IMG/VR virus record: IMGVR_UViG_3300047499_000113
Span: 1-64,000 of that record
Length of the DNA: 64,000 nt
Strand: one strand, 5' to 3'
Shown here piece by piece: positions 3,220 to 46,175 of this stretch (position 1 is its first letter; the number at the start of each line of letters is the position of its first letter). A program made the translations under genes and the position numbers. The notes beneath the pieces were generated by a model. It did not search any database. It was given only the letters and a program-made list of their open reading frames with translations, and had not been told where the DNA came from.

Positions 3220-3230
3220 GGGCCGGGACC

Positions 3231-6636: not shown

Positions 6637-7059
6637 TTACTTGGCTCCCGCTGCCTTCTGGGCTCGGACGTTGGACTGCAGCGTCTTGAAGTTCGCGAGG
6701 AGAGAGACCGACACGCAATTGGGCAGGCCGTACGCCGGCTTGCCGGAACCACATTTCATGTCGCTCGCCGCCACGGCCGCGCCAGCTTCCTGCGGCTGGT
6801 CGTAGTAATTGATGATGCTGGCGATGATCTGCTCGACATCAGCCAGGGTCGAGCCGATGCACGCGCCGGTGATCTTGAGCGGGTCGGTCACGCCTTGGAA
6901 CATCTCGGCGATGACGCAGCTGGCGATCTGGCCAACGTCCGTCGTCACCTGGCCGCTATTGCTGGCCCACCAGCCACAGCCAGTCTGCGTTGCTGTGGTG
7001 CCGCCGATAGCGACACCCATACCCACGATGATTGCGATTGGAGCCAGTTTGCGAATCAC
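6637..7059 (-). CDS. Putative lipoprotein / membrane-anchored protein
   Basis: MIRKLAPIAIIVGMGVAIGG...QTGC signal with lipobox-like Cys; further Cys pairs; coupled to both neighbours. Confidence 0.65.
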   Translation of the reverse strand: MIRKLAPIAIIVGMGVAIGGTTATQTGCGWWASNSGQVTTDVGQIASCVIAEMFQGVTDPLKITGACIGSTLADVEQIIASIINYYDQPQEAGAAVAASDMKCGSGKPAYGLPNCVSVSLLANFKTLQSNVRAQKAAGAK

Positions 7060-7508
7060 TTGCCACCTCCATCAGCCGCCGGCGCAGCAGGTGCCGGGGT
7101 GGGCGTTTTGCCCTGGGAAGACTTGTGCGCGATGAGGTGGGCATGGCACGCAGCGCCCGCGCCAGCTGACGACAGCGCCATGACGCCAGCGATGATGGCG
7201 TTCAGAATGGACGAGCCGTTGACACCGGAAGCGCCCTGCAGCGACAGACCGAAGGCCGTCAGGAATGAACCAGCCAGAGTCAGGTAGGGGATCCACGCCT
7301 TAGGCGTGGTCGCGACCCCGAAGAGACTGCCAGTGTTGACGGCCTGTCCAATGAAGCCCGCGAGCAGAGCGACGATGGTCACGATCGCCGTCTGTGTCGA
7401 AATCGTGACAGCCGCAGCGGGGGCCGCAGTCTGCGCGAAAGCGAGGCTCGCGAAGGACATGACGACGCCGAAAGTGAGGGCGAACGTCAGGGTAGATCGG
7501 AACTTCAT
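7056..7508 (-). CDS. Holin-like multi-pass membrane protein
   Basis: 150 aa; signal-like N-terminus and three hydrophobic segments (AIVTIVALLAGFIG, KAWIPYLTLAGSFLTAFGL, ILNAIIAGVMAL); GAGG RBS; first gene of the cassette downstream of the tail genes. Confidence 0.55.
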   Translation of the reverse strand: MKFRSTLTFALTFGVVMSFASLAFAQTAAPAAAVTISTQTAIVTIVALLAGFIGQAVNTGSLFGVATTPKAWIPYLTLAGSFLTAFGLSLQGASGVNGSSILNAIIAGVMALSSAGAGAACHAHLIAHKSSQGKTPTPAPAAPAADGGGK

Positions 7509-15700: not shown

Positions 15701-17579
15701 AGCCCGAGGTCGAAGCCACGAAGATGGTTGCCTGAGGCAACGTCTGGCCGTTCGAACCTGCGGCGATCGTCGTCGATGGCAGCGATCCGTTGGGGTCCGA
15801 CGTCATTCCTTCGAATCGGATGACGACGGCGTCCGGGTCCTCGGAAGGCAACACGAACCTGACTTGATCCGAGTCCGAGCCCGGCATACCCGCGGCGAAT
15901 GGGGAGAGCTGGATGGTGATGGAGTCGCCGTTCCACCACGATGGGTAGAGGCCGCCCGACAGTCGGTTACCGGGCACGTGGATGGGCGGGGTGCCTGTCC
16001 ACAGAACCTCGACGTTGTAAGGGGCGACCGTGAACTGCAGCGGCGTGTCGATGAGCTGCGAGTTCGAAGGAACGACCACCGGGACGTTGAAGCGCTGCGT
16101 GGTCACCGCATCCGAGAACATGCGGCGGTTTCCATCCGGAGCATCGAGTCTCGTCAGCCCTCCGACGAACACTGAAGAATCGGTGATGCGGTCGCCGTAG
16201 AAGGTAACGGGTCCTGCCGAGTTCGTGCTTCCGAAACGCTTCCAGGTCGAGCGCAGGTTGCCCTTGAGAAGCTCGATGAAGTTCGTCTTGAGGATGCTGT
16301 CGTAGTCGAACTTGTCCGCCACCGAGTGGCGCATGTCGAGAATGTCAGTCGCCGCGATTTGGTCGGCGAACAGCCCGTCCGGGCGAATCGTGTACTCGAT
16401 GAGGGGAGTACCCGAGTTGTGCGCGCGGATCGTCGTCTGGAGCTGGCCGCGGTCGATGGTGCAGGTGAACGACGTCGGCGAGTTCTGCACGACGTTGTTG
16501 ATGCGGATGATCTCGTCGTTGAGGTAAAAATACGCCTCGCCAAACGAGTTCATCGTCTGCAGCACGGTGCCGGCGATGCTGTTGATGGTGAAAGACGTGT
16601 CGGTCAGCCCCATTGCGGATTGGAGCGCGAGAGAGGCCGTGTACATCGTCGCGTCGGAACGGGAGATGGCGACGCTATTGCGATTGAACGCGCCGGCGAG
16701 GTTGCCCGTGTCGGAAAACCCTGCTCCGTTGCGACGGAAAACGGTGCAGATGGGGATGGCATAAACGTAGCCGTCTGAGGTTCCGAAAGTCGCCGGGTCG
16801 CCGGTCCCCGCACGCCAAAGGCCCGGGTCGCCGAGCGTCTGGCGCATGTTGGTGAAGGGGACGCTCGAGGGCTGCAGCAGGAGGCCCTGCGCGAACACGA
16901 GACTCGGGTCGAACCCTTCTGGATACTGCGCGATGTTGATTCCCTGGACGACGCGGATGCGGTACTGGACCTGCACGCGCTTCGTGGTCGGGAAGTTCAT
17001 GTCCGGATCGATGAGGTCGTCCGGGATGTAGCTGAAACCGCCTTCGACGTTGCCGAATCTATAGATGAACCCGCGCTGCGGCTTGCCTGGTGCGACACCC
17101 GGAGGGGCGGGATCCACGTCGATGACTGCCTGCCACACCTCGAGGAACACGAACTCGGCGATGTTGCCGCCCGTCGAGGTCGACGGAGGATTGAGCAGGA
17201 TTTTGTTCCAGGTGTCGACGTCGTCGGCTGCCAGCGGGGGCTCGCCGGTCTCCGTCCCTGCCACAGGGATAGGCCACCCGTTGACGACAGCCCACGTGAG
17301 GTTACGGACCTCGCCCGGAGTGTTGCGACCGAAATAGAACAGGTTCGAGTTGTTGACGTTCGTGAAGAAGTCGGCCTTTGGATTGGCCTCGTTCATCAGC
17401 CATCCGGAAGGCATCTCGGCGCGGAGAGCCTCTGCACGCGATTCCCAGTCGACAAGCGAAACGAGGTTCAGCTCGGAGTCGAGCGGTGGCTTGTTCGCCT
17501 GGAATACAACGACAGCAAATTGCTTGTCGCGGTCGTCCGTGTACCGGGAGACTCCGGGGCCTAGGGGATTAGTCGGCAT
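12729..17579 (-). CDS. Large baseplate/tail-fibre-attachment protein (1616 aa), paralog of 26891..29632
   Basis: N-terminal VVFQANKPPLDSELN, FLEVW, TTKRVQVQYRIRV, DGYVYAIPICTVFRRN, RPDGLFADQI motifs shared with 26891..29632. Confidence 0.7.
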   Translation of the reverse strand: MPTNPLGPGVSRYTDDRDKQFAVVVFQANKPPLDSELNLVSLVDWESRAEALRAEMPSGWLMNEANPKADFFTNVNNSNLFYFGRNTPGEVRNLTWAVVNGWPIPVAGTETGEPPLAADDVDTWNKILLNPPSTSTGGNIAEFVFLEVWQAVIDVDPAPPGVAPGKPQRGFIYRFGNVEGGFSYIPDDLIDPDMNFPTTKRVQVQYRIRVVQGINIAQYPEGFDPSLVFAQGLLLQPSSVPFTNMRQTLGDPGLWRAGTGDPATFGTSDGYVYAIPICTVFRRNGAGFSDTGNLAGAFNRNSVAISRSDATMYTASLALQSAMGLTDTSFTINSIAGTVLQTMNSFGEAYFYLNDEIIRINNVVQNSPTSFTCTIDRGQLQTTIRAHNSGTPLIEYTIRPDGLFADQIAATDILDMRHSVADKFDYDSILKTNFIELLKGNLRSTWKRFGSTNSAGPVTFYGDRITDSSVFVGGLTRLDAPDGNRRMFSDAVTTQRFNVPVVVPSNSQLIDTPLQFTVAPYNVEVLWTGTPPIHVPGNRLSGGLYPSWWNGDSITIQLSPFAAGMPGSDSDQVRFVLPSEDPDAVVIRFEGMTSDPNGSLPSTTIAAGSNGQTLPQATIFVASTSGFSSSGGTININGSTVNYTSISGSSFTGCTGGSGTMTTGEVVTSAGTTAPTTSNPDLLFPTQGNKVLKSGQGLSVTTDVNGNLVIRFQSGGVDTELQEFKDALQGNTAIPYVTNVVMHIDFAVVYGAGRGLSHKPDYIHTVWYRGSASNTTQTLLRGGLSGISRMIPTYLGDSPYVQTGVNRNLARTSEVMVDPGSKTVYAAPYREVRVPQLLARNGQQLNWYFNPTIQYQGAMPSLDQNGVNIVHPVVPQTTIDALNLFYHGVNSLYFEIPWEYLPRPGLHHIPLQATTNAVFPSGLNFMFVAQEGPNLNNSSYNENIVSYPSAPGYYIVTPNVGETYGTQAGILSIFGTKYTNNSLQSANGGPFQGIQFPPFLAPARITGVYLRQGSAVQPISSPFNNNRQFVGQPGADVNLLHDSYDGPTVLLNVDANGDPYFILSADCLDFTKAPSGTNFNNAQFVVECVLFGFDRGFLQTNGRVCVAKNTGGGVILQDQFSTSQDGTIGIIAPAPLSSNASNNELTIYYSRQPYQGDPFGTQNAYSDDLYRLGPLTVGEATSIFTSPLGPISSLALPNETGFEVLASTSFVMSLGTGRLSGSQPLPLLDTFEAPNNPPDYAGTLLDLARRFSANRVGYEDWSDQLFPVVNSPTPPTGVATRPPTKIGGLDPVYDNFVPPEFAGATSQLPMGIYFRDKDFVGKTLYQQINSTGVGANAVGTFTFQNYEASLAPSAPGESTWEGTEFICGNTSGTTGVGSEAVIRVDGTANPASTTVFKTTRGGAAWSVTPPWVGGPISSRFPKVRPNINAGSLLVGSAFLVRSQPESVGSTEIHMGNELQMFVVTQAVPAYFRDTNVSHSAAGTNEGFTAVDRYRLLGKPLEKRRGYVNTGILPVPPALFVTNIFDNPLFFGSSDVSLNSQEQITLPVTSDGQLTFTLPNRPLDPTAVQMFLNGVKLQYGLNYTVGGTTNQTVTYIVSGSNPALLTTDIVEFWYLLF

Positions 17580-18391: not shown

Positions 18392-18811
18392 CTACCCGCT
18401 GGATGCGACGTCGTGAACAGTGAAGATTCCCTGATAAAAATAGACCGTGAGCGGGTAGACTGCGCTCAAAGGAGACACCTGCACCGAAATGCTTCCCGTG
18501 GAATTTATGACCCTGTGAATCCTGATGCTTCCGTGACCTGAAATGGTCTGGACCACTCCTCCGCCAGAGATGGGTTCCCCACCGAGAGCGAACTGGACGA
18601 GCAACTGTATCGGCTGTTCGACGAACACACTCAGTGCAACATGGGCGAGAAACGTGTTTCCAAGACTAGGCGAAATCCCAATCCCGTTGGTAGTGGCGTT
18701 GGAGAAGTCACCCTGGTTTTCCCATGCGATATTCTGAGGGGTCCCGTTCGTCCAGATGTACGCGGCGTCCGGATCAGTGAGTCGGAACAGGTTGGAAAGC
18801 TCGCCGTACAT
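18392..18811 (-). CDS. C1q/BclA-CTD-like beta-sandwich protein, paralog 3
   Basis: YGELSN...IAWENQGDFS...YFYQGIFTVHD; aligns with the two adjacent upstream genes. Confidence 0.6.
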   Translation of the reverse strand: MYGELSNLFRLTDPDAAYIWTNGTPQNIAWENQGDFSNATTNGIGISPSLGNTFLAHVALSVFVEQPIQLLVQFALGGEPISGGGVVQTISGHGSIRIHRVINSTGSISVQVSPLSAVYPLTVYFYQGIFTVHDVASSG

Positions 18812-18817
18812 GCTGCC

Positions 18818-19243
18818 TCACGTATCGAGGTCTTGGATGGTGAAGGCGCCTTGATAGAAAGACGCCGTGCACGGAAGCGAGGGCAGAGACACCAAGTTCA
18901 CCCCGAGTCTCACGGAATCGCCAGTCCTTAGGGCCACCATCTTTTGCAGGCTCACCACTCGAGACCCGCCGAAAACTGAGCATGTGATCCCAGCGATATT
19001 CCCTCCCGCTGTGGAGAGAAACTGGAAAAAGAGTTGTATCGGCTGGCCCGTGTAAACAGACACGCTGGCCTTGAGCAGAAACTCACCGGCACCGGACACA
19101 ACGAATCCATTGTTCGACACAGTGACACCCGACAGGTCACTGCTTGACGTCCACGGGACTGCTTGTGTCTTGTATCTTGTCCAGGTGAGAGTTACCTCGG
19201 CGGGGTACATCAAGCTGACGTCGTTGTAGAGCTGGCCGTACAT
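18818..19243 (-). CDS. C1q/BclA-CTD-like beta-sandwich protein, paralog 2
   Basis: YGQLYND...VPWTSSSDLS...SFYQGAFTIQD. Confidence 0.6.
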   Translation of the reverse strand: MYGQLYNDVSLMYPAEVTLTWTRYKTQAVPWTSSSDLSGVTVSNNGFVVSGAGEFLLKASVSVYTGQPIQLFFQFLSTAGGNIAGITCSVFGGSRVVSLQKMVALRTGDSVRLGVNLVSLPSLPCTASFYQGAFTIQDLDT

Positions 19244-19680
19244 CAGTTTATTCCTTCGACAGAAAAAGCTCCCTGGAAGAAATAGACTGTAATCGGACTA
19301 GGAATCGGATTCGCAATGTTCACTTGCACAATGGCGGTGTCTTCCCCCGCAAGATAGCCCAGTTGCTGCAAGGAGACAGTCGTGACGCCCGGAAAAGCGT
19401 TTACGGTCACACCTGCAACGGGCAGGACCACACCGTCCGTCTGAAATGAGAACACCAGTTCGACGGGCGTCGGCGAGTAGAAACTAATGCTCGCAGTGAG
19501 CGAATATTCGATCGTGGGACCGATTTGGAGACCGTTCCCATTCCGGTTTATCCCGTTGAACGAGCCGGAATTTCGCCACGGCACGATCTGAACCGCCGGA
19601 AGCGATACCCACGCGAGAGCTGCTCCCGGGTCGGTCATCGACCAGTCGCTGTACAACTCACCGAAAGTTCCGGGGTCCAC
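19243..19680 (-). CDS. C1q/BclA-CTD-like beta-sandwich protein, paralog 1
   Basis: FGELYSD...VPWRNSGSFN...YFFQGAFSVEG. Confidence 0.6.
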   Translation of the reverse strand: MDPGTFGELYSDWSMTDPGAALAWVSLPAVQIVPWRNSGSFNGINRNGNGLQIGPTIEYSLTASISFYSPTPVELVFSFQTDGVVLPVAGVTVNAFPGVTTVSLQQLGYLAGEDTAIVQVNIANPIPSPITVYFFQGAFSVEGIN

Positions 19681-19693
19681 GCCCGGATGAGCG

Positions 19694-19705
19694 ATAGGAG
19701 CGCTA
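19694..19705 (-). promoter_or_regulatory. Candidate late-promoter motif TAG-N7-AT
   Basis: TAGCGCTCCTAT upstream of 19680. Confidence 0.4.
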
Positions 19706-19709
19706 GAGA

Positions 19710-21275
19710 CTAGAAGCCGGTGATCTGATACTGCAGCGTCTCGGACCCGACCGTGTGCGAGTACACGTTAATGTAGCTCTGGAACGGTGAATTCTGGAAC
19801 GCAGCCGCCCAAAGAGTTCCGGCAGCAGTCGATGATTTGACGGCGTTGATTTGTCCGGTGACGCCGGTGTAAATGGTCGAAACTAGCGTGGCCGAGGAGT
19901 TGTATCGAGCCACCCACTGATAGGTCGACAGTCCCGGCCCATTGATCTGCACGAACATCGTGTTGTCGATGGGATCGTAGTCCAACCGGCCCGTGATGAG
20001 AGTCGTCGCATACGGGGCTGGCGAAGTAGGCAGTGTGATGTATGGAGACCCGTCGGCAAAGATCTGAGCGGTTGATCCTCCGAAAGTCTGGTACGGGGAA
20101 TTCGGATTTCCGCCAATAGACCACATGACGTGGCCAAAAATGTAGTCCACCCAATAAGTAGTCGGGTACGTGTTGGCGCTGTTGTATTGAGTGGACGAAA
20201 CCGTGGCTAGGGTTGAGGCATTCACCTCGAATAGCACTTCATAGTCACCAAAGAAGAAGCTGATGTTGTCAGCTGTGCCTCCCCAAAGGTGACCAGTGCT
20301 GGAGTTGTACCCCATATGGCGGAGGTTCCAGTTGAACCCCGTGTACGTGTCGGTATTGGCTGCAACTGGAGTGACTGCAGTCGGAAACGCCGTGATAGCA
20401 GCTGCCGTATTGAACTGCAGGATGTTCGCGCCGGAAGTGGGGTGGATGTTTATGTCGCTGACGCAAGTATAGAGAGAGCCACCCGTGGCGACTGCTGAGT
20501 CCGGAAAAATGACAGCATATTGAACGCCACCATAGAGTGGATTCATGTACCCAACGACATTGAGCGTCGACTTGTCGATGACTAGGATGTACACGGTGCT
20601 ACCCTGGCCAGATGGTAGCGCATACACATAGTTCGCATCGGCTGCGAAGGCTGCCGCTCCGCGATTCGAACCAGTCCAACCGGCGGATACGGGCACGTTG
20701 ATCACCGCATGGGTGGCGCCCGTCGTCCCATCCAAAACTGGAATGACGGCAGTCGTTTGCTCGACATCAGCGACGTACATCAAGTTGTTGACTGAGTCGT
20801 AGTACAAGTCCTGGATGAATTTGAACGGCGTAAGTGGGAATGGCGTCGGTTGAACAGCCTTTGTGATGAAAACGTCTGCGGTGACGTTCACGACAGCCTG
20901 AGTGCTGCCGGTGTTGAACACCATCTGCAGGCGGTCAGGACTGGATGCTGCAGTCACTGTGAAGGTCCAGGAGGACGCGGAAGAACTTCCGAACTGATCA
21001 ACAGTATCCGAGGCACTAACTACCGTGACGCCGGCGATTCGACTTACCGCGAACCTCTGGACGAAGGACTGAGAGGCTGTCGAAGTGAGGATGTAACCGT
21101 TTGCGCTCACGCGGATTTCAATGGTTCCGCTGTAGCCACTCGGCAGGACAAAGTACGTGTTGATCGGCCCGACAGCACCAGAGGGACCGGCGTTGACCAG
21201 TGCAATAGACTCTCCGACCGCGTTGCCGGGTGTGGACCCGGTGAGAGTGACGTCGGGGAGAGGCTGGAAAGTCAT
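19710..21275 (-). CDS. Putative receptor-binding protein: shared N-terminal adaptor plus beta-propeller
   Basis: N-terminus PLPDVTLTGSTPG...SFVQRF...SSWT...SPDR...TGST shared with 21278..22735 and 22738..23790; propeller blades DLYYDSVNNLMYVAD etc. Confidence 0.65.
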   Translation of the reverse strand: MTFQPLPDVTLTGSTPGNAVGESIALVNAGPSGAVGPINTYFVLPSGYSGTIEIRVSANGYILTSTASQSFVQRFAVSRIAGVTVVSASDTVDQFGSSSASSWTFTVTAASSPDRLQMVFNTGSTQAVVNVTADVFITKAVQPTPFPLTPFKFIQDLYYDSVNNLMYVADVEQTTAVIPVLDGTTGATHAVINVPVSAGWTGSNRGAAAFAADANYVYALPSGQGSTVYILVIDKSTLNVVGYMNPLYGGVQYAVIFPDSAVATGGSLYTCVSDINIHPTSGANILQFNTAAAITAFPTAVTPVAANTDTYTGFNWNLRHMGYNSSTGHLWGGTADNISFFFGDYEVLFEVNASTLATVSSTQYNSANTYPTTYWVDYIFGHVMWSIGGNPNSPYQTFGGSTAQIFADGSPYITLPTSPAPYATTLITGRLDYDPIDNTMFVQINGPGLSTYQWVARYNSSATLVSTIYTGVTGQINAVKSSTAAGTLWAAAFQNSPFQSYINVYSHTVGSETLQYQITGF

Positions 21276-22710
21276 GGTCAGTATTGGGTGATGGTTGCCA
21301 GGAAGGATTCTGTCCCTATGCCTGTTGAATAGATATCGATGTGTCCTTTGGCGGGCGAAAAGTCGTACTGCCCGACCCAGAGCCCCAGGGGCTCAGCCGC
21401 AGCGACGTAAGCGCGGCCGTTCACGCCTGCATTACCGAAGATGGAGGCTTGCGTGTTGGAGCTTGCAGCAATGCGCCAGATGTTCTGAGCACCGTAGCTG
21501 TTACCATTGAGCATGGCTGCAAGCACGGTGTCATGGTATGGGTCGTACGAGATCGCCGTTGGTGCGGGAAGACCGGAGGCAGGTGCAGGAGCACTCGCGC
21601 TCAAGAAGATGAAAGTTGATAGGTCACGAAGCACCGAGCCTGGCGTGCTGTCGAAGTTGTAGTTCGGAGCGTTGAAATTACCGTGACCGATGCAGAACCA
21701 AACCGACGAGTCCGCGAAACAGCCGTGGTAGGTGAACACGCCTTCGGTTGTCGGATTGGTGTCGATCGAGTACGTGGTGACGGAGCTTTCAGACAGAGCA
21801 CTTGTGAGCTGCACCAAAACAGCCTGTGACGACGAGACGTAACATCCTGCCCACAGAAGGCTGTCGTTCGGGTCCCAAACAATCCCGCGGAAATCGCGGC
21901 TCACAGTCGTATTGGCATCCGGCGACGCGGGTGTCGGGTATGACGAGATGACCGACGAGATGGTAAACCGGTAGATGATGTTCCCGGACAACGAGATCGC
22001 GTACAAGTGCGTTCCGTCCGAAGCCAGGTCGTAACCACCGAACCCCGTGGAAAGGTTGGCGATGCCGATGATGGAGCAGTGCACAGGGTCGATGATGAGA
22101 ATGTGCTTCTGGAACCAATTGCTAGCGTAGATGTACGTGCCGTCACCAATGATCCGTGTGGCACCGGTCGTCCAGCTGGCACTGGTGGCGTTGACAACCG
22201 CTTTCGGGCTGCGAGTCGCGGCCTGGAAAACCGGGATATCTGGATTCGAGAGATTCGGGTCTCCAATCCACATATTGTCGTTGGTGGAATCGTAGAACAG
22301 ATCCCAAACCTGAACGAACGAGCGGACCGGCGGAGCAGTCCCAGGCTTGATGGACCTCGTGACCTGTATGTCGGCTCGCACGGATGTGTAAGCCTGGGTA
22401 CTGCCGGTCGTGAATGTGAGGGCGAATCTGTCCGGACTCGAGCCCACTGAAGCGGTCACCGTCCACGACGAGGCACCTGCATCGCCAAGCTGATCCAGCG
22501 TATTGGACGCGACGATTGTCGTCACACCTGAATCTCGGCGGACACAAAACCTACGAATGAAAGACTGGGAAACAAACGCTCCCGAGATGATGCCGCTGGC
22601 AGCTACCCGAACTTGGAGTGTGAAGCTCTCGTTGTCGGTTAGGGTGAAGTGAGGCAGCAACTCCACAGACTCGCCCGTCGCGAATCCAGGTGTGGACCCG
22701 GTGAGAGTGA
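21229..22710. repeat. 22-bp identical repeat in the 5' ends of two RBP paralogs
   Basis: GGTGTGGACCCGGTGAGAGTGA at 21229-21250 and 22689-22710. Confidence 0.85.
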
Positions 22711-22735
22711 TGTCGGGAAGCGGTAGAAAGCTCAT
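21278..22735 (-). CDS. Putative receptor-binding protein: shared N-terminal adaptor plus beta-propeller
   Basis: Same adaptor; DLFYDSTNDNMWIGD, DLASDGTHLYA, GIVWDPNDSLLWAG blades. Confidence 0.65.
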   Translation of the reverse strand: MSFLPLPDITLTGSTPGFATGESVELLPHFTLTDNESFTLQVRVAASGIISGAFVSQSFIRRFCVRRDSGVTTIVASNTLDQLGDAGASSWTVTASVGSSPDRFALTFTTGSTQAYTSVRADIQVTRSIKPGTAPPVRSFVQVWDLFYDSTNDNMWIGDPNLSNPDIPVFQAATRSPKAVVNATSASWTTGATRIIGDGTYIYASNWFQKHILIIDPVHCSIIGIANLSTGFGGYDLASDGTHLYAISLSGNIIYRFTISSVISSYPTPASPDANTTVSRDFRGIVWDPNDSLLWAGCYVSSSQAVLVQLTSALSESSVTTYSIDTNPTTEGVFTYHGCFADSSVWFCIGHGNFNAPNYNFDSTPGSVLRDLSTFIFLSASAPAPASGLPAPTAISYDPYHDTVLAAMLNGNSYGAQNIWRIAASSNTQASIFGNAGVNGRAYVAAAEPLGLWVGQYDFSPAKGHIDIYSTGIGTESFLATITQY

Positions 22736-22737
22736 GA

Positions 22738-23790
22738 TTAGAACAACGCAATCTTGTAACGGGCGCTCGCGTAATTCATGTATTGCGCGATTTCAGCTGC
22801 ATTGATGACACGAGGCCACAGGATTTGCTCGGCGACATAAGACTGGTTGCTGCCAAGATTTTGATCGAGACTTGATGTGATGGTGGTTGGGGTCGTACCA
22901 CTCCCCGTCGCTCGAACAGCTGTCCCGTTCACGTAGAGACTGACCGCACCACCCGAGGTGAATGTGCCAATGATGATACCCGGCACAGCTCCGAGGGTCA
23001 CTCCAGTATACTCGACGACGCTACCTTCGTAGATGTATGGGTAGCAAGGAGACGACGAAACGCCTGTGCTTGGACCTGTGGTCTGCCAGACGAAGGTCCC
23101 TCCCGCCAGTCCGCCCCTATAAACCGAGGCAATCGTCCAGCCAACGGCTGAATTCAGGGAGAGCGCACCTGAGAACAGCTCTCCGAGAACGGCGGCCGGG
23201 GATCCGATTGAAGCTTGATGGTTGAATGTTGAATCGGACGCGTTCCATAGCGGCTGTTGCGAAGGCGTCGACTGTGACAGGTCTGTGTGGAAACTGGTCT
23301 GATCGGCCCAAAACGACACGTTGCCGGCGTTCAGAGTCACACCAAGATCGGCTCTGTGAGCTTCGATGGGGCCGACCGGGATCGAGAGCAGGAAGTTGTT
23401 CGGTTCGACGGTGACCCGAATGTCGGCCGTGACGTTGACGATGGACCTCGTGCTTCCAGTCGTAAACGTGAGTTTGAATCTGTCAGGGCTCGTCCCAACA
23501 GTCGCAGCCAACGTCCATGAGGAACCACCGGAATCTCCGAAAGCATCCTGGGAATCGCTGGCGACAATAGTAATCACCCCCAAGCTGCGTCTCACGGAGA
23601 ACCTCTGCACGAAGGATCGGATCGTCCTCGTGGCAGGATAGACATAGCCTGCAGCCACCACGCGCACTTCGAACGTCAAGCTATGATTGTCAGCGGGCGT
23701 GAAGTGCGGCAAAAGTTCGACAGATTCGCCCGTGACAGAACCCGGAGTGCTGCCCTTGAGAGAAATGTCGGGTAGCGGCAGGTAGCTCAT
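22738..23790 (-). CDS. Putative receptor-binding protein: shared N-terminal adaptor plus LamG/concanavalin-like domain
   Basis: Likely start ATG 23790 (MSYLPLPD); VSFWADQ...LSQSTPSQQP, SLYVNG, VAEQILWPRVINAAEIAQYMNY pattern typical of phage LamG-like lectin domains. Confidence 0.65.
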   Translation of the reverse strand: MSYLPLPDISLKGSTPGSVTGESVELLPHFTPADNHSLTFEVRVVAAGYVYPATRTIRSFVQRFSVRRSLGVITIVASDSQDAFGDSGGSSWTLAATVGTSPDRFKLTFTTGSTRSIVNVTADIRVTVEPNNFLLSIPVGPIEAHRADLGVTLNAGNVSFWADQTSFHTDLSQSTPSQQPLWNASDSTFNHQASIGSPAAVLGELFSGALSLNSAVGWTIASVYRGGLAGGTFVWQTTGPSTGVSSSPCYPYIYEGSVVEYTGVTLGAVPGIIIGTFTSGGAVSLYVNGTAVRATGSGTTPTTITSSLDQNLGSNQSYVAEQILWPRVINAAEIAQYMNYASARYKIALF

Positions 23791-24728
23791 CAGACGATCT
23801 TGTAGTGACTGCCCGTCCATTGCCAGTCGATAGACTGGCTGTTCACGGAGATTTGGACTGACGTCGCGAAATTCCCTTGATTGTTCGGATCCTCGATGGG
23901 ACGGCTGGCTTGACTCTGGACCGTGATCGGATAGGTCGCAGCGAATCCTGTGTCATCAGTCACTCGGAAGAGCTGCTGGGTTGTGGGCAGGGTGAGGTCC
24001 GGAGCGTTGACTGTCGTGGTAGCCACGCTCGTGTCTACGATGGCCTGCAAGTGAGAGGAGTCGAGAGTGCCGGTCGATGGGTTGGCGTTCCCAACATTGA
24101 TGAAGCCGACCGGAACACCGATAACAGTTCCTCCTCCACCAGAGGCATTGGAAGAGATGACCTTCCACTGGTCATAAGATTCCACGAACTCCCACGTAAC
24201 GACTTGCGAATTCGTGTGGATGGTAACGCTGGACGAATAGGTTCCAGGACTGTTCGGGTCCTCGATCTGGAATCCGTTGCCGTAGACCGTGATGTTGTTG
24301 GTTGCAGCGTTATTGTTTGCGTCAGCAACCGTGCAAACCCAGTCGATGGTCCCGTAAGTCGTCGCATCTATCAGGTTGACTGTCACCGGTCCTGACAGAG
24401 TGTCCACCATCGCTGTCAGCGACGTTGGCGTCAGCGTGATGGTGCTGGAGCTGAGAGTCTGACCTGCTTGACGGCCTCCATTCGAGAATCCGAGAGGCCG
24501 GTTCATATAGCGAATGCTATTGAAATTCCTGTCTTCCCATGCGCCAGTGTAGAGGGCAATGGTGTTGATACCGAGGCCCGACTGGTAAATCGGGACAACG
24601 ACAGTTCCGGAACTGTCAACTGCTATTCCTCGAGGAGATGCACCCAATCCCGGAGACTGTGTAGTAAACAGAATCTCCCCCGTCTCGGGATGTATGCGAT
24701 AGACTGTCGAGGGGCTTGCGGCAGGCAT
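23790..24728 (-). CDS. Fibre protein with two T4 gp34-like beta repeats; probably the C-terminal part of 24732..26891
   Basis: Two copies of VDT-x4-5-TVN...D...AAT.xITV...IEDPN...NSQ...W; in frame with the upstream ORF, separated only by TAA-ACC. Confidence 0.6.
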   Translation of the reverse strand: MPAASPSTVYRIHPETGEILFTTQSPGLGASPRGIAVDSSGTVVVPIYQSGLGINTIALYTGAWEDRNFNSIRYMNRPLGFSNGGRQAGQTLSSSTITLTPTSLTAMVDTLSGPVTVNLIDATTYGTIDWVCTVADANNNAATNNITVYGNGFQIEDPNSPGTYSSSVTIHTNSQVVTWEFVESYDQWKVISSNASGGGGTVIGVPVGFINVGNANPSTGTLDSSHLQAIVDTSVATTTVNAPDLTLPTTQQLFRVTDDTGFAATYPITVQSQASRPIEDPNNQGNFATSVQISVNSQSIDWQWTGSHYKIV

Positions 24729-24731
24729 GGT

Positions 24732-26891
24732 TTATGGATTCCCGATAGATGCGTAAATGGAAACCCCGTCCCACACCAATCGACCGCCGAACGGTGCAGG
24801 AATCGTCACTGACGAGATCTCAGATCCGATCTGAGTCTCCGTACCCACTCCTGTCGTGTAGCGGAATAGACCTCGAGTCGGGAAATCAGCGACGGTAACC
24901 CAAATGGCTGTGGGAGTTATGACCGCGGAACTGTTTCCACCAATAGGTGGAACCCACGTCGACACTTCAAGATTAGTCGATGTGCTAACGCGACTGACGC
25001 TCTCGCTCTCATCACCAACCAGAATAGTGCCGAACGTGGCATCGTAGCTCAAGGCGCTTGATGTGCTTGTAGAAGTGACGATGTTCGTGAATGCACCGCC
25101 AGCGGGGAACGCGGTCGGATCGACTCGGAAAAGATTCCCCGAGTACCCGCTAAAGACGGAGCCCGTGGACGCCCAGATAGACCCGGCCGCCGCAAGAACG
25201 AACTGGATGCACGGGTAGGCACTTCCTGTTCCCGGGAAATCGAAGTGAGAAATTTCGACCAGAGTGCTCGTGTTTAGCTTCACGAGTGACTCGGTGACTC
25301 CAGTTTCGTTTTGAGTACCTGCGAAAACGGTCCCCGTCACTGGGTCATAGGCACAAGCGTGGTATCCACGCTGTACGGGCGAAGTGACCGATGGTCCGAT
25401 AGCCGACGGATATGAGGACAACGCCGTGGCAATGGAATACTTCTGGATGTTGCTGCTTGTGAGGCTCGAGTAGTTACTCGCAACGATGTAGATGTTGCCA
25501 GCCCCGTCGAGGGTTTGGTCCTGCACGGTAAGACCGGCACCGGCATCCAGCATCCCAACGATAGCACCTGTCGTCTTGTTGACGATGATCAGGTACCTAT
25601 CGAATCCGAACCCGTTAGAGATGTAGACGTAGTTGGAGTCACCGATGACTCGACTGGCGCCGTTTCCAATGGCAGTAAGATCAACCGCTAGGTCTCCAGC
25701 TTGAGTAGCTGCCTTTATCGAGACGGCCGTGCCGAGCTTCTGGTCGGCCACCCACACATTGTCGTTGGGAGCGTCGTAGAACAGATCTCTGGGGCTAGAG
25801 AAACTGACTGTATCGCCAGACGCCGGCAGTGGAATCACTGGACCAGCGTTTCCAGACGTCAGGTCCCACGCGTAGATCGTCGGAATACCAGAATTGCTCG
25901 CAAGAATACGAGCAAACCGTCCATCCGAGATCATATCCAGGGCCGTCACACCGGTCGCGATTGTACTCACTTGAGTAAGCGAGTAGGTAGAGAAATTGAT
26001 AGAGAATTTGACTAGACTTTGGCTAGTGTTATATGCGACCCAAAGGAATCCGGCGTCATCGAGAAACATCGCGTTTGGCGCGTCGCCTGTTGTAAACGCA
26101 TCGTGAATGGTGCCAACAGAATCCACGATGTAGATGTGCCCGTTGGTCGCGCTGAAAGCGAATTGCGGGGTGGTGCTTAGAACTGGGTCACCACCACCGC
26201 CTCCAATGAAGCACGCACGCACGGGTGCTGACGTCGTCGCAGTGTGGTAACTCTGGACGTAATACATGTTCGGGGGCGTGCCATTGATTGTTCCGCATTC
26301 TACGAACAACCCGTCGGGAAAAGCCCCGAAAATGTTATCCTGAGGAGACGGGAACACCGTTCCCGTCTGGCCACGAATGCCGATCAAGTCGACCGGCGTG
26401 TCCCCATAATTGGTCAGCGAGCCACTCATCACTGATTGCGGAACGAACAGGTCGATACCAACGAGAGCACCCGGTGTTTTGGAATATCCAACATAGAAAA
26501 ACTTGTCACCGATGAAACATGTGGCGATTCCAGCCACCTGAGTTAGATAGTCGGTGAGTACGCTGATCCCGAGGTTGGCTGGAAAAATGTAGCCGGGGGA
26601 TATTGGCGTATTGGAAGCGAGCAAATCGTTCCTTCGCAGGAATGGCTGCTTCCTTGTGCGCAGAGTAGTCGCGTTATCCGTGAACCCACCGCCGCCTGTG
26701 ATGTTGATCGTAGCCACACCGCTGCCGGCGTCCGCCGCGGTCACACTCCCAGTGAGATTGAGGATGGTATGCGGGTTATTCGGGATGGGAGTGCCAGCCT
26801 GCTCGATGCTGACACCCGGAGTCCCACCACCAGCTCCCGATTCAACGGGAACGACGGGCTCTGGAGTAAGCTGTACGAACGGCCTGGGCAT
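24732..26891 (-). CDS. Beta-propeller tail/receptor-binding protein
   Basis: Contains a propeller paralogous to 19710..21275 and 21278..22735 (DLFYDAPNDNVWVAD...RYTTGVGTET) plus additional blades. Confidence 0.65.
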   Translation of the reverse strand: MPRPFVQLTPEPVVPVESGAGGGTPGVSIEQAGTPIPNNPHTILNLTGSVTAADAGSGVATINITGGGGFTDNATTLRTRKQPFLRRNDLLASNTPISPGYIFPANLGISVLTDYLTQVAGIATCFIGDKFFYVGYSKTPGALVGIDLFVPQSVMSGSLTNYGDTPVDLIGIRGQTGTVFPSPQDNIFGAFPDGLFVECGTINGTPPNMYYVQSYHTATTSAPVRACFIGGGGGDPVLSTTPQFAFSATNGHIYIVDSVGTIHDAFTTGDAPNAMFLDDAGFLWVAYNTSQSLVKFSINFSTYSLTQVSTIATGVTALDMISDGRFARILASNSGIPTIYAWDLTSGNAGPVIPLPASGDTVSFSSPRDLFYDAPNDNVWVADQKLGTAVSIKAATQAGDLAVDLTAIGNGASRVIGDSNYVYISNGFGFDRYLIIVNKTTGAIVGMLDAGAGLTVQDQTLDGAGNIYIVASNYSSLTSSNIQKYSIATALSSYPSAIGPSVTSPVQRGYHACAYDPVTGTVFAGTQNETGVTESLVKLNTSTLVEISHFDFPGTGSAYPCIQFVLAAAGSIWASTGSVFSGYSGNLFRVDPTAFPAGGAFTNIVTSTSTSSALSYDATFGTILVGDESESVSRVSTSTNLEVSTWVPPIGGNSSAVITPTAIWVTVADFPTRGLFRYTTGVGTETQIGSEISSVTIPAPFGGRLVWDGVSIYASIGNP

Positions 26892-29632
26892 TAGTGCGCC
26901 ACCCTTCTCGGATTGAGCATGTTCCCGGGAACTCGATAGACCGCAGCAGCGCTGTCACTGAGACCGGGCTGCAATCCGATGTTCACGTTCTGGTCGAACT
27001 CACCCCAGCGACTAAAGACGACCATAACGAGAGTGCCCTTCCTCCCGATGCTTCCTACACCGATGCCTCCATTGAAATCGGCTCGCAGTTCCATGAGAAC
27101 GGGGAACGCCACTTTGTGCTGCTGCGCCAAAGACATCGACTGACCCCAAATGACGGGCGAGTAAATCGGAGGACTCCCGGAATCGGATCGCGGCCAGAAG
27201 TTCCGGTTGTCACCATCGATTGTCGTGTCTGGCGCGAGCTTGTAGAGCTGCACCTGGCCGGGATCGGGAGAGTATGGGATCATCGCCTGCAACTGCAGAT
27301 AGCCGGCGTTGATGCCGAATCCGACAACCGAAATTGCACTCGGGGAATCGAGCCGTGCCTCCGGGTAATCCGATGGTGGTAGCAAACCGATCGGAATTTG
27401 AGCGCTGGGAGAGACATACGGGAACGAATCGTCCGGGCTACCCGATCCTTGAGTGAGCAGGTGAATGGCTTTGGGGATCGCGCGAGCGTAGAGCGGCAAC
27501 GTGATCGGACCACCCGACGGGACCGGAATGGACTGAATCGCTGCAGTGTTGTACCAGATCTGGTACGAATCGTCCGGCGCGGCACCGACCGTAGGAAGAG
27601 GACGAAGCGCTACGAAGGTCGCCTGCACTGGCGTGTTGGCCGAGACAGCGGGGCTCAAAGTTACCTGCGTGTAGTTCGCGTTCACCACGTACGCAGTCGT
27701 CGTATACGGCGGGTTGATACCGTCGTTGATGGATACGGTTCCGGAGAGCTTCTCCGGGATCCAGATAGCCGCACCGGTGGAATCCGCGTAGTACATGTTC
27801 GGCCCCTGCGCAGTCGTGCGAAGACGCGCCGCGACCTCACGATGCCCTGGATTGGCCCACCAGAGGTTGGTCGTGTCAGTCGGAGACCCGGGATTCGTGA
27901 GTGCGAACCGTCCGCCGTCACTCGTTGGCGAAAGCTGAGTGGCGTCTACCCACACCGGTAGACTGGCTGCCGGTGGAGTCCAGAACGCCACCGAATTGAG
28001 CATGTTGCGTTTGGTGCCGTTGTCATTCAAGTATTCTATCCACAGCTCTGCTTGGATCGTGAAGCTCGAGCCAGGGGCTGTGTTGAGGTTGACTGTAACC
28101 GTGTCTATTGGGCCACCGAGCGTGCTGGCAGTCAGAACGACCGACTGCGCGAAGACCGTGTTGGTCAGATCCGTCAGGTCGAGGTCTGTACTCGAGACGA
28201 GCATCCGCAAGGATCCAACACCAGAGATGTTCGTCCCGGCGGGGGCCAAAGCGGCGAGATTCACAGTGCCGGGCGCCAGGTACACAGGTGACAACGCATT
28301 GAGGTGAAACACCACGGTAGTCGTGGAACCCGTCTGCGACCCGCTCGTGACAGCAATCGACTCGGTAATCGATCTGTCGCTGAAGTTGATACGAACGCCG
28401 TCAGAAGTCCCAATGTGACCAGGCGGGCTCGTGATGTCGTCCTTGTAAAGGAACGAGGTTCCGCCGATGACGTTCGAGATGCCGAAGTCTTGATTGTACT
28501 CGAGTTCGGTAGCGAGTGTGTTGTCGAGAAGGCGTTGGAACGTCTTGTCGAGGACTTCCGTCAGATCCCACGCCACGCCCTTGCGCAGATCGAGAACATC
28601 CGACACGACGATCTGATCGGCGTACAGGTTGTCGGGTCGACCGGAAACCGCCGATCCCATGAGCCCGGCACCATTGACGTTGGTCATCCTGTCGAACGGT
28701 GCGCTATTACGACGGAAGACCGCACAAATCGGAACGGCGTACATGTAGCCGTCGACTGTCCCGAGCAGCGCCGCAGAAGGAGAGTCTCCCGTACCAGCTA
28801 TCCAGAGCCCAGCGTCTCCGGGCGAAGGCATGTACTGAAACCCCGTGGGAGATCCATCGGGACCCGGAGAAGGGTAAGCGGGGATAGTGTTGGCGACTGC
28901 GACAGGGCAGTCGAGTCCGTCCGGAAAAGCCTGCAGCCATTTGTCCGGAAGATTCGAGATGACTCGATATCTGTACTGGATCTGGACTCGCCTCGCAGTT
29001 TCCTCAGCAAAGGTCGGATCCACGAGGTCGTCCGACAAATTCTGGTTGGGACTGACGTCGGGACTTTTGACGTTGCCGTAGCGCAAAATCTGCCCGGCCT
29101 GGCTTTTGTTCGTCGAGTCCGGGGCCGGCGACACCAAAGCCCTCCAGACCTCGAGAATGACCAGATCGGTGCGTTCTCCGCCAAGAGGCGGAGCCGGAAG
29201 AACAACGTAGTTCGTTCCTTGCACGCCGTAATTGGGCAGCGTCGTGTTGGCTTCGATGGCCGTGAGGTTGAAGTTCACGAGCCAGCCGTTGACGTTCACC
29301 GTCGAGGCGGATAGAGCGAACGTGTTGGCCGTGGTCGAAGACGTCGTGTCAGGCGCTAGAAACGTGTAGTCTCCCGTGACGTTCGAGCGCTCGAGGAAAT
29401 CTGCGTTGAGCCATCCCGAAGGGAGAAACTGCTGACTCAGGAGCCGAATGCCGGCCGCCCCAAGGATCGACTGCAGGAGGTTGATCTCCCAGTCGGCGGA
29501 CGGCTTGTTCTGCTGGATGACAAGCTGCTCCCACGAGTGGTCCTGGGACGTGTATGCGCCACTCCCGTTCGCAGGTTCCTGGACCTTCTGCGGGTTCTGA
29601 CTGACGTTCGGTCCGAGGTTCTCGAATCCCAT
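26891..29632 (-). CDS. Baseplate/tail-fibre-attachment protein (913 aa), paralog of 12729..17579
   Basis: QQNKPSADWEIN, ILEVW, ETARRVQIQYRYRV, DGYMYAVPICAVFRRN, RPDNLYADQI. Confidence 0.7.
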   Translation of the reverse strand: MGFENLGPNVSQNPQKVQEPANGSGAYTSQDHSWEQLVIQQNKPSADWEINLLQSILGAAGIRLLSQQFLPSGWLNADFLERSNVTGDYTFLAPDTTSSTTANTFALSASTVNVNGWLVNFNLTAIEANTTLPNYGVQGTNYVVLPAPPLGGERTDLVILEVWRALVSPAPDSTNKSQAGQILRYGNVKSPDVSPNQNLSDDLVDPTFAEETARRVQIQYRYRVISNLPDKWLQAFPDGLDCPVAVANTIPAYPSPGPDGSPTGFQYMPSPGDAGLWIAGTGDSPSAALLGTVDGYMYAVPICAVFRRNSAPFDRMTNVNGAGLMGSAVSGRPDNLYADQIVVSDVLDLRKGVAWDLTEVLDKTFQRLLDNTLATELEYNQDFGISNVIGGTSFLYKDDITSPPGHIGTSDGVRINFSDRSITESIAVTSGSQTGSTTTVVFHLNALSPVYLAPGTVNLAALAPAGTNISGVGSLRMLVSSTDLDLTDLTNTVFAQSVVLTASTLGGPIDTVTVNLNTAPGSSFTIQAELWIEYLNDNGTKRNMLNSVAFWTPPAASLPVWVDATQLSPTSDGGRFALTNPGSPTDTTNLWWANPGHREVAARLRTTAQGPNMYYADSTGAAIWIPEKLSGTVSINDGINPPYTTTAYVVNANYTQVTLSPAVSANTPVQATFVALRPLPTVGAAPDDSYQIWYNTAAIQSIPVPSGGPITLPLYARAIPKAIHLLTQGSGSPDDSFPYVSPSAQIPIGLLPPSDYPEARLDSPSAISVVGFGINAGYLQLQAMIPYSPDPGQVQLYKLAPDTTIDGDNRNFWPRSDSGSPPIYSPVIWGQSMSLAQQHKVAFPVLMELRADFNGGIGVGSIGRKGTLVMVVFSRWGEFDQNVNIGLQPGLSDSAAAVYRVPGNMLNPRRVAH

Positions 29633-46142: not shown

Positions 46143-46175
46143 GCCTACCCACAATACGGGGATAAGAACTGGATG

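What the first reader, a model, noticed from the sequence alone, without database searches (positions are those of the whole stretch)
19710..23790. Three plug-in receptor-binding proteins with a common adaptor and swappable heads
Seen: three consecutive genes share a ~135 aa N-terminal domain, followed by a propeller, a second divergent propeller, or a LamG-like lectin. Two share a 22-bp identical DNA stretch, and the region has more A/T-ending codons than the core genes. Inference: a modular host-range cassette, either competing for one docking site or forming a heterotrimer with three different heads; the 3+3 match with the adjacent C1q-like genes suggests pairing.
Basis: partly seen in the sequence, partly recalled or inferred. 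Interest (0 to 1): 0.6.

Follow-up and report, generated by a model that had tools for sequence, protein, structure and literature searches.

The report
Three phage adhesins, shared base, swapped heads
A huge phage from moss metagenomes carries three neighbouring tail genes that share a constant N-terminal beta-sandwich and differ in their sugar-binding-type heads; relatives keep exactly three such genes but with other heads, which extends a known design principle of phage host recognition.

Summary
Genes g1 (19710-21275), g2 (21278-22735) and g3 (22738-23790), all on the minus strand, share a 128-143 aa N-terminal domain at 49-62% identity. Behind it come a 7-bladed NHL-type beta-propeller (g2), a divergent propeller (g1), or a ConA/LamG-like domain (g3). 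The 22-bp identical stretch and the lower GC3 are also real.

The window is the start of a 240-kb fragment of a huge phage. The genes lie in its baseplate and fibre operon.

Five related lineages each carry exactly three such genes behind the same two upstream genes, but with different heads. The nearest lineage has adaptors 59-72% identical, yet two of its three heads are unrelated folds. In one lineage a gene is a headless 130-aa adaptor.

The "adaptor" belongs to an undescribed family. It folds like the C-terminal domains of tailspikes and of T4 gp9. In 111 of the 150 best hits it sits at the extreme C-terminus of fibre-like proteins.

Swappable heads on a constant module are supported. Pairing with the three C1q-like genes is not: a relative keeps the triad and lacks those genes. 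Whether the three form a heterotrimer or occupy separate sites stays open, because the complex prediction gave no verdict. This is a new variant of a known kind.

The parts
19710..21275 (-). g1, 521 aa (P0001): constant N-terminal domain (about 20847-21275, with a 12-aa loop insertion) plus a type-1 beta-propeller head (about 19710-20846).
   Evidence: The head is 50.5% identical to the heads of A_513 and 27.6% to the g2 head. The adaptor is 59-63% identical to P0009, and similarity ends at residue 147.
21278..22735 (-). g2, 485 aa (P0002): constant N-terminal domain (about 22343-22735) plus a type-2, 7-bladed NHL-type beta-propeller head (21278-22342).
   Evidence: AF2 model with pLDDT 85.9. 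Propeller matches. Profile hit to Pizza/NHL propellers at E 4e-11. The head is 69% identical to that of B_488.
22738..23790 (-). g3, 350 aa (P0003): constant N-terminal domain (about 23401-23790) plus a ConA/LamG-like head (22738-23400).
   Evidence: AF2 model of the domain with pLDDT 93.5. The head is closest to B_366 (57%), while the adaptor is closest to C_356 (72%).
21229..21250 (-). 22-bp stretch in g1 (codons 9-16, motif [IV]TLTGSTP) that is identical to 22689-22710 in g2.
   Evidence: (family D1). It is the longest exact match among 91 adaptor pairs; the next longest are 19, 18 and 17 bp.
22689..22710 (-). The partner copy of the 22-bp identical stretch, in g2.
23790..24728 (-). g312 (P0005): conserved gene immediately upstream of the triad in the five lineages whose upstream sequence could be read. 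Its C-terminal ~105 aa are 65-72% identical across lineages. It is a candidate docking partner, by inference only.
   Evidence: Its stop codon overlaps the g3 start.
24732..26891 (-). g719 (P0004): conserved upstream protein. Its C-terminal propeller is homologous to the g1 and g2 heads, and it has N-terminal fibre-type repeats.
   Evidence: (D2). Pfam Lactonase and NHL matches are sub-threshold.
18392..19680 (-). c1, c2 and c3: three paralogous 139-145 aa proteins with a C1q/BclA_C-like fold, directly downstream. They are not part of the conserved module.
   Evidence: 29-34% identity to each other. (TM 0.8 to BclA_C and C1q clusters). Absent from relative G001.

Best explanation
g1, g2 and g3 are a conserved triad of modular tail adhesins (accessory receptor-binding proteins) of a huge phage.

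Each protein has four parts:
1. A conserved free N-terminal peptide, M-[ST]-[FY]-x-P-L-P-D.
2. A ~120-aa nine-strand beta-sandwich that serves as the constant assembly module.
3. A short proline-containing linker.
4. An exchangeable head of a carbohydrate-binding type: NHL beta-propeller or ConA/LamG-like here; DUF4082 and others in relatives.

Proposed mechanism. The constant module fixes each protein to the baseplate or fibre periphery, probably on the products of the two conserved upstream genes, and probably also oligomerises it. The heads contact host surface glycans. New specificities arise when recombination just behind the last strand of the sandwich replaces a whole head.

The three constant modules are old paralogues of three types. 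Every lineage keeps one of each, so they most likely occupy three non-equivalent positions and do not compete for one.

Shown: the domain architecture, the folds, the structural-operon context, the constancy of three, head replacement at a sharp boundary, and discordant head and adaptor trees.

Inferred: virion attachment, oligomeric state, glycan binding and the docking partner.
For: Context. A baseplate wedge (gp6/J-like) gene lies at 42690-46154, a collagen-like tail fibre at 40170-41795 and a tail protein at 12729-17579, all on one strand. Gene junctions of 0-2 nt fit translational coupling.

Constant module. There are three copies per genome in G000 and G001. Lineages B, C, D and E also carry three.

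Head exchange.
- Between the window and lineage C the adaptors are 72, 65 and 63% identical, in the same gene order.
- Their heads are LamG/LamG (36% identical), propeller against DUF4082, and propeller against an unrelated 579-aa protein.
- The head tree joins g3 with B_366 (support 100/99) and rejects g3 with C_356 (AU p 0.0009). The adaptor data disfavour g3 with B_366 (p 0.036; 0.067 in the larger set).

Headless adaptor. A 130-aa adaptor without a head is kept in lineage E, in the position of the LamG gene.

Age of the triplication. Adaptors do not group by genome (AU p 0.012-0.045 for W, 0.018 for C, about 1e-85 for A). The best tree fits three types with one per genome using the minimum number of changes (type III support 87/88).

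Fold. The AF2 model has pLDDT 93.5. Its best matches are all C-terminal domains of phage tailspikes or fibres, or gp9-like baseplate proteins: 7xy1 Z 9.3, 9f4a_LA Z 8.5, 6e1r Z 8.2, 6c72 Z 7.2, 5w5p Z 7.0, and 1qex at Foldseek E 6.5e-3.

What is known of such domains. They trimerise tailspikes (PMC13082707). In T4 gp9, the C-terminal domain is the socket onto which fibres attach coaxially (PMC3004832).
Against: - There is no direct evidence that the proteins are in virions or bind anything.
- In 111 of the 150 best family members the domain is at the extreme C-terminus of fibre-like proteins. There it cannot be the virion-proximal anchor, so a docking role here is an extrapolation.
- Structural matches of Z 8-9 are only moderately above background for this search (note), and there is no sequence match to any solved structure.
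- Between orthologous pairs the heads are as conserved as the adaptors or more so (for example g2/B_488: head 69%, adaptor 57%). This is not the pattern of an arms-race head on a frozen anchor.
- The three-type scheme was partly defined after seeing a tree, and support is weak for types I and II.
- The trimer prediction gave no verdict.
Confidence: 0.6

Rival explanations
1. Heterotrimer. The three N-terminal domains, one of each type, co-assemble 1:1:1 into a single trimeric stalk base that displays three different heads. That would make one combinatorial receptor-binding protein.
For: - All six lineages have exactly three adaptor genes.
- The pattern fits one of each of three ancient types per genome.
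- A headless adaptor is retained where a head was lost, as expected if the third chain is structurally required.
- Tight gene junctions fit equal dosage.
- The structural neighbours of the fold are trimers.
Against: - All those structural neighbours are homotrimers.
- Three homotrimers at three distinct sites explain the same counts.
- Support for types I and II is weak.
- The g1N+g2N+g3N prediction stayed below the mark; this counts neither for nor against.
Confidence: 0.17
2. Reversed polarity. The shared domain is not an anchor. As in its C-terminal relatives, it is a distal lectin-like or trimerising cap. In these proteins it is the constant ligand-binding or oligomerising part, and the variable 'heads' do something else, possibly including contact with the virion.
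For: - 111 of the 150 best family members carry the domain at the very C-terminus of fibre-like proteins that have shaft repeats and sometimes propellers.
- The nearest folds are the C-terminal CBM or lectin-like domains of depolymerase tailspikes.
- Those domains are documented to trimerise and to help bind capsule (PMC13082707).
Against: - Parts that contact a conserved virion should themselves be conserved. Here the heads are replaced by unrelated folds, or lost, while the upstream structural genes stay the same.
- A conserved N-terminal peptide specific to the N-terminal class precedes the domain.
- Propeller, LamG and DUF4082 domains are typical ligand-binding modules.
Confidence: 0.15
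3. The three proteins are not virion components. They could be, for example, secreted or cell-surface lectins made during infection, or redundant paralogues drifting without a joint function.
For: - No Pfam or PHROG family assigns a structural role to them.
- No virion data exist.
Against: - They are embedded in a long single-strand tail and baseplate operon with 0-2 nt junctions.
- All three reading frames are intact and conserved in six lineages.
- Relatives of the domain sit in proteins with tail-fibre families.
Confidence: 0.05

Closest known systems
Modular receptor-binding proteins with an N-terminal anchor and an exchangeable C-terminal specificity module. Examples: Klebsiella phage KP32 gp37/gp38 and related depolymerase RBPs (PMC8262889, PMC13082707); the branched TSP1-4 complex of phage CBA120 (PMC8825819).
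   Same: - Several RBP genes lie side by side in the tail module.
- The N-terminal part is constant and the distal part varies.
- Whole distal modules are exchanged by recombination at a domain boundary.
- A short conserved N-terminal peptide recalls the conserved docking peptide of KP32 gp38.
   Different: - The constant module is a different domain with no sequence relation. It resembles the C-terminal, not the N-terminal, domains of those tailspikes.
- The heads are NHL propellers or ConA-like lectin folds, not beta-helix depolymerases.
- The number of paralogues is fixed at three across lineages, with three old adaptor types.
- Attachment has not been demonstrated.
C-terminal beta-sandwich (CBM or lectin-like) domains of phage tailspikes and fibres (7xy1 Kp9 gp42, 6e1r, 6c72, 5w5p, 8oq0) and the C-terminal 'socket' domain of T4 gp9 (1qex).
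   Same: - The fold is similar: Z 7.0-9.3 over 107-130 residues, and Foldseek E 4e-4 to 7e-3.
- In most sequence relatives of the window's domain the position is also C-terminal.
- These domains trimerise or act as a coaxial attachment socket.
   Different: - There is no detectable sequence similarity.
- In the window the domain is N-terminal and is followed by a head.
- The oligomeric state is unknown.
RBPs of lactococcal siphophages (p2, TP901-1, Tuc2009), with shoulder or stem, neck and exchangeable head. This comparison rests on my own knowledge and was not tested here.
   Same: A constant N-terminal part embedded in the baseplate, with an exchangeable saccharide-binding head.
   Different: - Those are single homotrimeric RBPs present in many copies, with jelly-roll heads.
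- Here there are three paralogues with unrelated head folds.

Membership tests
Modular phage RBPs (N-terminal anchor plus exchangeable distal module) | A constant N-terminal module shared by paralogues and orthologues, with variable distal modules. | tested here: met
   The adaptors are 39-73% identical across 17 proteins, and at least six unrelated or distant head classes occur.
Modular phage RBPs (N-terminal anchor plus exchangeable distal module) | Encoded within the tail, baseplate or fibre gene module. | tested here: met
   Baseplate_J / phrog_6 wedge subunit, collagen-like fibre and phrog_1101 tail protein on the same strand.
Modular phage RBPs (N-terminal anchor plus exchangeable distal module) | The N-terminal module physically attaches the protein to the virion. 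| not testable with these tools
   This needs virion proteomics, cryo-EM or pull-downs.
Modular phage RBPs (N-terminal anchor plus exchangeable distal module) | The distal module binds the host receptor and sets host range. | not testable with these tools
   Only fold classes are known (propeller, ConA-like). The host is unknown; the phage occurs in moss metagenomes.
Tailspike C-terminal CBM/lectin-like domain and T4 gp9 C-terminal domain | The same beta-sandwich fold. | tested here: met
   The model has pLDDT 93.5. The top seven VIA rows are such domains at Z 5.7-9.3, above unrelated rows at about Z 5. Foldseek gives E 4e-4 to 7e-3. The strength is moderate.
Tailspike C-terminal CBM/lectin-like domain and T4 gp9 C-terminal domain | Detectable sequence homology. 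| tested here: not met
   A profile search against PDB sequences found only one chance-level hit, E 2 and 0.72. There is no Pfam or PHROG family.
Tailspike C-terminal CBM/lectin-like domain and T4 gp9 C-terminal domain | Forms a trimer. | tested here: inconclusive
   The complex prediction of the three N-terminal domains gave no verdict.
Tailspike C-terminal CBM/lectin-like domain and T4 gp9 C-terminal domain | Located at the C-terminal end of the fibre or spike. | tested here: not met
   It is N-terminal in g1-g3 and in 13 of the 150 best hits. It is C-terminal in 111 of 150.
Pfam Laminin_G_3 (ConA-like lectin/glucanase), for the g3 head | Score above the Pfam gathering threshold. | tested here: not met
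   The score is 17 bits against 27.6 (E 0.007), and only g3 of seven orthologues matches. Atlas feature neighbours at 0.97-0.98 are Laminin_G_3 clusters. The fold assignment is likely, but membership is not shown.
NHL-repeat beta-propeller, for the g2 and g1 heads | Propeller fold with NHL-type blades. | tested here: met
   The AF2 model shows a 7-bladed propeller. A profile hits NHL-derived Pizza propellers at E 4e-11. The Pfam NHL and Reg_prop matches themselves are sub-threshold.
Diversity-generating retroelement target | A reverse transcriptase in the genome. | tested here: not met
   There is no RVT_1 match in the 240-kb record. The record is only 56% complete.
C1q/BclA_C-like globular heads (c1-c3), paired with the triad | Co-occurrence of the C1q-like trio with the adaptor triad in relatives. 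| tested here: not met
   The fold is supported. G001, however, has three adaptor genes and no c1-c3 homologue. Lineages A-C showed no BLAST match; E was not tested. Lineage C may carry BclA_C-like genes further downstream, but no DNA was available.

The most novel reading that the evidence does not exclude
The three constant domains are three non-interchangeable chains of one obligate heterotrimer, with one chain of each ancient type in every genome. The phage would then display three different ligand-binding heads on a single stalk, and could lose a head (lineage E) but never a chain. The domain family would be a general coaxial 'socket' of phage fibres, used here in inverted order.
Probability: 0.15. 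Interest if true: 0.75.

Novelty: new variant of a known kind. Interest (0 to 1): 0.5.

Why it matters
Modular receptor-binding proteins are the basis both of natural host-range change in phages and of host-range engineering in laboratory phages. Almost all worked examples come from cultured phages of enterobacteria and lactococci.

This locus extends the principle to uncultured huge soil and moss phages, and it differs in three ways:
- The constant module belongs to an undescribed family of about 240 representative proteins. It is normally the distal end of fibres and is used here in inverted order.
- The heads are NHL propellers, ConA-like domains and DUF4082, not depolymerases.
- The number of paralogues is fixed at three, and one natural member has no head.

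If the triad proves to be a heterotrimer, or a set of three defined sockets, it would be a new way of combining receptor specificities. It would also give a function to an unannotated domain family.

Tried and rejected
- **Complex prediction** of g1N+g2N+g3N, each chain with a 40-row alignment: ipSAE 0.15 against a mark of 0.32. No verdict, so no evidence either way.
- **Pfam and PHROGs** on g1-g3 and their neighbours: no family for the adaptor, and only sub-threshold hits for the heads.
- **tblastn of g2 against 50,697 deposited phages**: no match. Tunturiibacter phage Tunturi_5, the nearest cultured relative by its baseplate wedge protein, lacks the domain. A C-terminal-class fibre (P0021) matched deposited phages only in its shaft repeats, not in the knob.
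- **Word-based protein search with the g2 head**: only one homologue, B_488.
- **Metagenome contig scan**: only one new locus, of the C-terminal class.
- **Reads.** Contigs from three moss-metagenome runs were identical to the window wherever they covered 19000-24900. Coverage was patchy and no single piece spans the stretch. No head variants were seen in the population. The joints in the low-depth run X9 sit on 200-nt contigs and were dismissed.
- **DGR hypothesis**: no reverse transcriptase in the record.
- **Gene conversion as the origin of the 22-bp identity**: at most a weak hint, because between-genome pairs reach 17-18 bp.
- **Whether adaptors follow heads.** A clade of the propeller-1 adaptors is not rejected (AU p 0.18 and 0.056). 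A clade of all propeller adaptors is marginally rejected (p 0.037). A clade of the LamG adaptors is not rejected (p 0.35). The 130-aa alignment is too short to settle how heads moved between adaptor types.
- **Contigs for P0152 and P0098** (divergent N-terminal-class proteins): too short, or no DNA was held, so their gene counts are unknown.

Full report
**What the window is.**
The window is the first 64 kb of a 240,015-bp IMG/VR virus record that CheckV estimates to be 56% complete. Nearly all long ORFs between 7.5 and 64 kb lie on the minus strand. They include:
- a 1154-aa Baseplate_J / phrog_6 wedge subunit at 42690-46154;
- a collagen-repeat tail-fibre protein at 40170-41795;
- a Big_5 protein;
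- several 1300-2100-aa proteins without any family.

The wedge protein's best database relatives are a 485-kb uncultured phage (35% identity) and the 309-kb Tunturiibacter phage Tunturi_5 (26%). The DNA is found in moss metagenomes. The finding therefore lies in the tail, baseplate and fibre operon of a huge phage.

**Check of the observation.**
The genes are g1 at 19710-21275 (521 aa), g2 at 21278-22735 (485 aa) and g3 at 22738-23790 (350 aa), all on the minus strand.
- Spacing. g3/g2 and g2/g1 are 2 nt apart. g3 overlaps the stop codon of the upstream gene g312 in the sequence TGATG.
- Shared domain. Their first ~130 residues align at 49-62% identity (about 143 residues in g1, which has a loop insertion). 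Both a single-protein search and a 40-sequence profile find exactly three copies in this genome.
- Start of g3. Orthologues all begin M-[ST]-[FY]-x-P-L-P-D, which places the g3 start at 23790.
- 22-bp identity. It lies at 21229-21250 and 22689-22710. It is the longest exact match among 91 adaptor gene pairs, but pairs from different genomes reach 17-18 bp. It is real and proves little.
- GC3. It is 0.64-0.69 in g1-g3 against 0.71-0.84 in the flanking structural genes. The low-GC3 block spans 18392-26891, which is the whole local module from c1 to g719.

**The heads.**
- g2. An AF2 model built on a 28-row alignment (pLDDT 85.9) shows the N-terminal sandwich followed by a seven-bladed beta-propeller. 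It matches G-beta, YVTN and other propellers. A profile of the propeller sequences hits NHL-derived designed 'Pizza' propellers at E 4e-11.
- g1. Its head is homologous to the g2 head over its full length (27.6% identity, E 2e-23).
- g719. The C-terminal propeller of the upstream 719-aa protein belongs to the same family (D2).
- g3. Its head reaches only a sub-threshold Laminin_G_3 score. Its language-model neighbours at 0.97-0.98 are viral Laminin_G_3 clusters. The ConA/LamG-like fold is likely but not proven.

**The shared domain.**
It has no Pfam or PHROG family.

A profile of 11 copies, searched against 1.84 billion representative proteins, found 241 hits at E of 1e-3 or better and 166 at 1e-10 or better. 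Among the 150 best:
- 13 carry the domain at the N-terminus, all from this phage clade;
- 111 carry it within 0-4 residues of the C-terminus of proteins 168-1256 aa long;
- 23 are essentially the domain alone;
- 3 carry it internally.

The C-terminal-class proteins contain YadA-head-like and phrog_25468 shaft repeats, a tail-fibre PHROG, and sometimes propellers. The same shaft repeat occurs in g719 and in the g312 family.

An AF2 model of the domain (pLDDT 93.5) is a nine-strand beta-sandwich. Its best structural neighbours are all C-terminal domains of phage tailspikes or fibres, or gp9-like baseplate proteins:
- Kp9 gp42: Z 9.3, 118 residues aligned, rmsd 3.4;
- KP1 baseplate chain 9f4a_LA: Z 8.5;
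- Acinetobacter phage tailspikes 6e1r, 6c72, 5w5p and 8oq0: Z 8.2 to 6.2;
- T4 gp9: Foldseek E 6.5e-3.

Unrelated folds start at about Z 5. Such terminal domains are reported to be necessary and sufficient for tailspike trimerisation (PMC13082707). In T4 gp9 the C-terminal domain is where long tail fibres attach coaxially (PMC3004832). These resemblances are leads and do not show function. No sequence similarity to any solved structure was found.

**Comparison with relatives.**
Five further lineages were recovered:

| Lineage | Loci | Source |
|---|---|---|
| A | L004/L005 | 363-kb IMG/VR record |
| B | L008 | - |
| C | L010/L011, plus P0009 on a JGI contig | - |
| D | L018/L019 | - |
| E | L025 | 101-kb contig |

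All share the order [g719-like][g312-like][three adaptor genes]; for D only a partial upstream ORF, not compared, was seen. In lineage C two small genes are inserted before the third adaptor gene.

Heads, in gene order:

| Lineage | First gene | Second gene | Third gene |
|---|---|---|---|
| Window | LamG | propeller-2 | propeller-1 |
| A and D | LamG | '400-type' | propeller-1 |
| B | LamG | LamG | propeller-2 |
| C | LamG | DUF4082 | unrelated 579-aa protein |
| E | none (a 130-aa adaptor that stops right after the sandwich) | '400-type' | propeller-1 |

The cleanest case of head exchange is the window against lineage C.
- The adaptors are each other's best matches, position by position (72, 65 and 63% identity).
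- Two of the three heads are nevertheless unrelated folds.
- Similarity between g1 and P0009 ends sharply at residue 147 of g1.

For g3 the two halves of the protein give different trees. In the head tree g3 joins B_366 (support 100/99), and a g3 + C_356 grouping is rejected (AU p 0.0009). The adaptor data disfavour g3 + B_366 (p 0.036; 0.067 in the larger data set).

Heads are therefore exchanged at the boundary behind the constant domain.

**Three old adaptor types.**
- Adaptors do not group by genome: AU p is 0.012-0.045 for the window, 0.018 for C and about 1e-85 for A; it is not rejected for B. The triplication is thus older than the lineages.
- The best tree is compatible, with the minimum number of changes, with three types of which each genome has one. 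Type III has support 87/88, type I 46/76, and type II is unresolved but not rejected.
- Gene order by type is II-III-I in A, B, D and E, and III-I-II in the window and C.
- The types were partly named after seeing a first tree, and the alignment has only about 130 columns. I treat the scheme as favoured, not shown.
- A constant count of three, together with retention of a headless adaptor, argues against three proteins merely competing for one site. It fits either three non-equivalent sites or a heterotrimer.
- The single complex prediction (g1N+g2N+g3N) stayed below the mark. It counts neither way.

**The C1q-like genes.**
c1-c3 (18392-19680) are paralogues at 29-34% identity. The pairing idea is not supported:
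- the 363-kb relative has the triad and no c1-c3 homologue;
- lineages A-C showed no BLAST match to c1-c3; lineage E was not compared with them;
- lineage C may have BclA_C-like genes a few genes further on, but its DNA could not be fetched.

**Population data.**
Contigs from moss-metagenome runs were identical to the window wherever they covered 19000-24900, although coverage was patchy. No head variants are seen within this population. The variation lies between lineages. No reverse transcriptase that would suggest a diversity-generating retroelement is present in the record.

**Verdict.**
The 'constant module with swappable heads' reading is supported by comparative evidence. The C1q pairing is not supported, and the stoichiometry remains open.

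The general principle is well known for cultured phages (PMC8262889, PMC13082707, PMC8825819). The new elements are:
- an undescribed domain family used in inverted order;
- non-depolymerase heads;
- a strictly conserved triad with a natural headless member.

I classify this as a new variant of a known kind, with interest 0.5.

The read-laying run used 5,901 letters.

Noticed in passing
window 48106-48798 (-): A 230-aa ORF with GC 0.46 and GC3 0.40, against about 0.59 and 0.75 in its neighbours. It has a weak HNH endonuclease match (E 5e-4). It is probably a homing endonuclease inserted in the structural operon.
   Followed up: partly
window 26891-29632 (-) and 12729-17579 (-): The 913-aa and 1616-aa proteins share a homologous N-terminal region of about 330 aa (34% identity, E 2e-33). 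This is a second pair of structural proteins with a common N-terminus and different distal parts. The 1616-aa protein has a phrog_1101 tail-protein match.
   Followed up: no
window 18392-19680 (-): Three tandem paralogues of 139-145 aa (c1-c3) with a C1q/BclA_C-like fold and no collagen stalk. They might form a C1q-style heterotrimer. They are absent from the 363-kb relative.
   Followed up: partly
window 23790-24728 (-) and relatives (L005 7784-8956, L008 2844-3770, L010 2326-3642, L025 8539-9603): g312 has an internal repeat (residues 95-191 resemble 206-312, 38% identity). Its C-terminal ~105 aa are 65-72% identical across lineages, the most conserved stretch of the module. Relatives insert a variable number of fibre-type repeats in the middle, and g719 carries the same repeats at its N-terminus.
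   Followed up: partly
L025 9605-9997: A 130-aa gene that consists only of the adaptor domain. It sits in the position where lineages A and D have the LamG-headed gene, and it is 71% identical to the A_344 adaptor. It occurs on contigs from several samples.
   Followed up: yes
L010 5707-6252 and the JGI contig of lineage C: Two small genes (181 and 187 aa) are inserted between the second and third adaptor genes of lineage C. The 181-aa protein weakly resembles part of the DUF4082 head (31% identity).
   Followed up: no
window 5521-7287 (+): The only long plus-strand ORF in this region (588 aa). It has GC 0.67 and an unusual codon-position profile (GC1 0.79, GC3 0.65), and no Pfam match. It may not be a real gene, or it may encode a low-complexity protein.
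   Followed up: no
window 845-5303 (-): Replication-type genes lie at the start of the window: a DnaB-like helicase (845-2371) and an SNF2/ResIII helicase (3231-5303). The structural operon therefore begins at about 7.5 kb.
   Followed up: no
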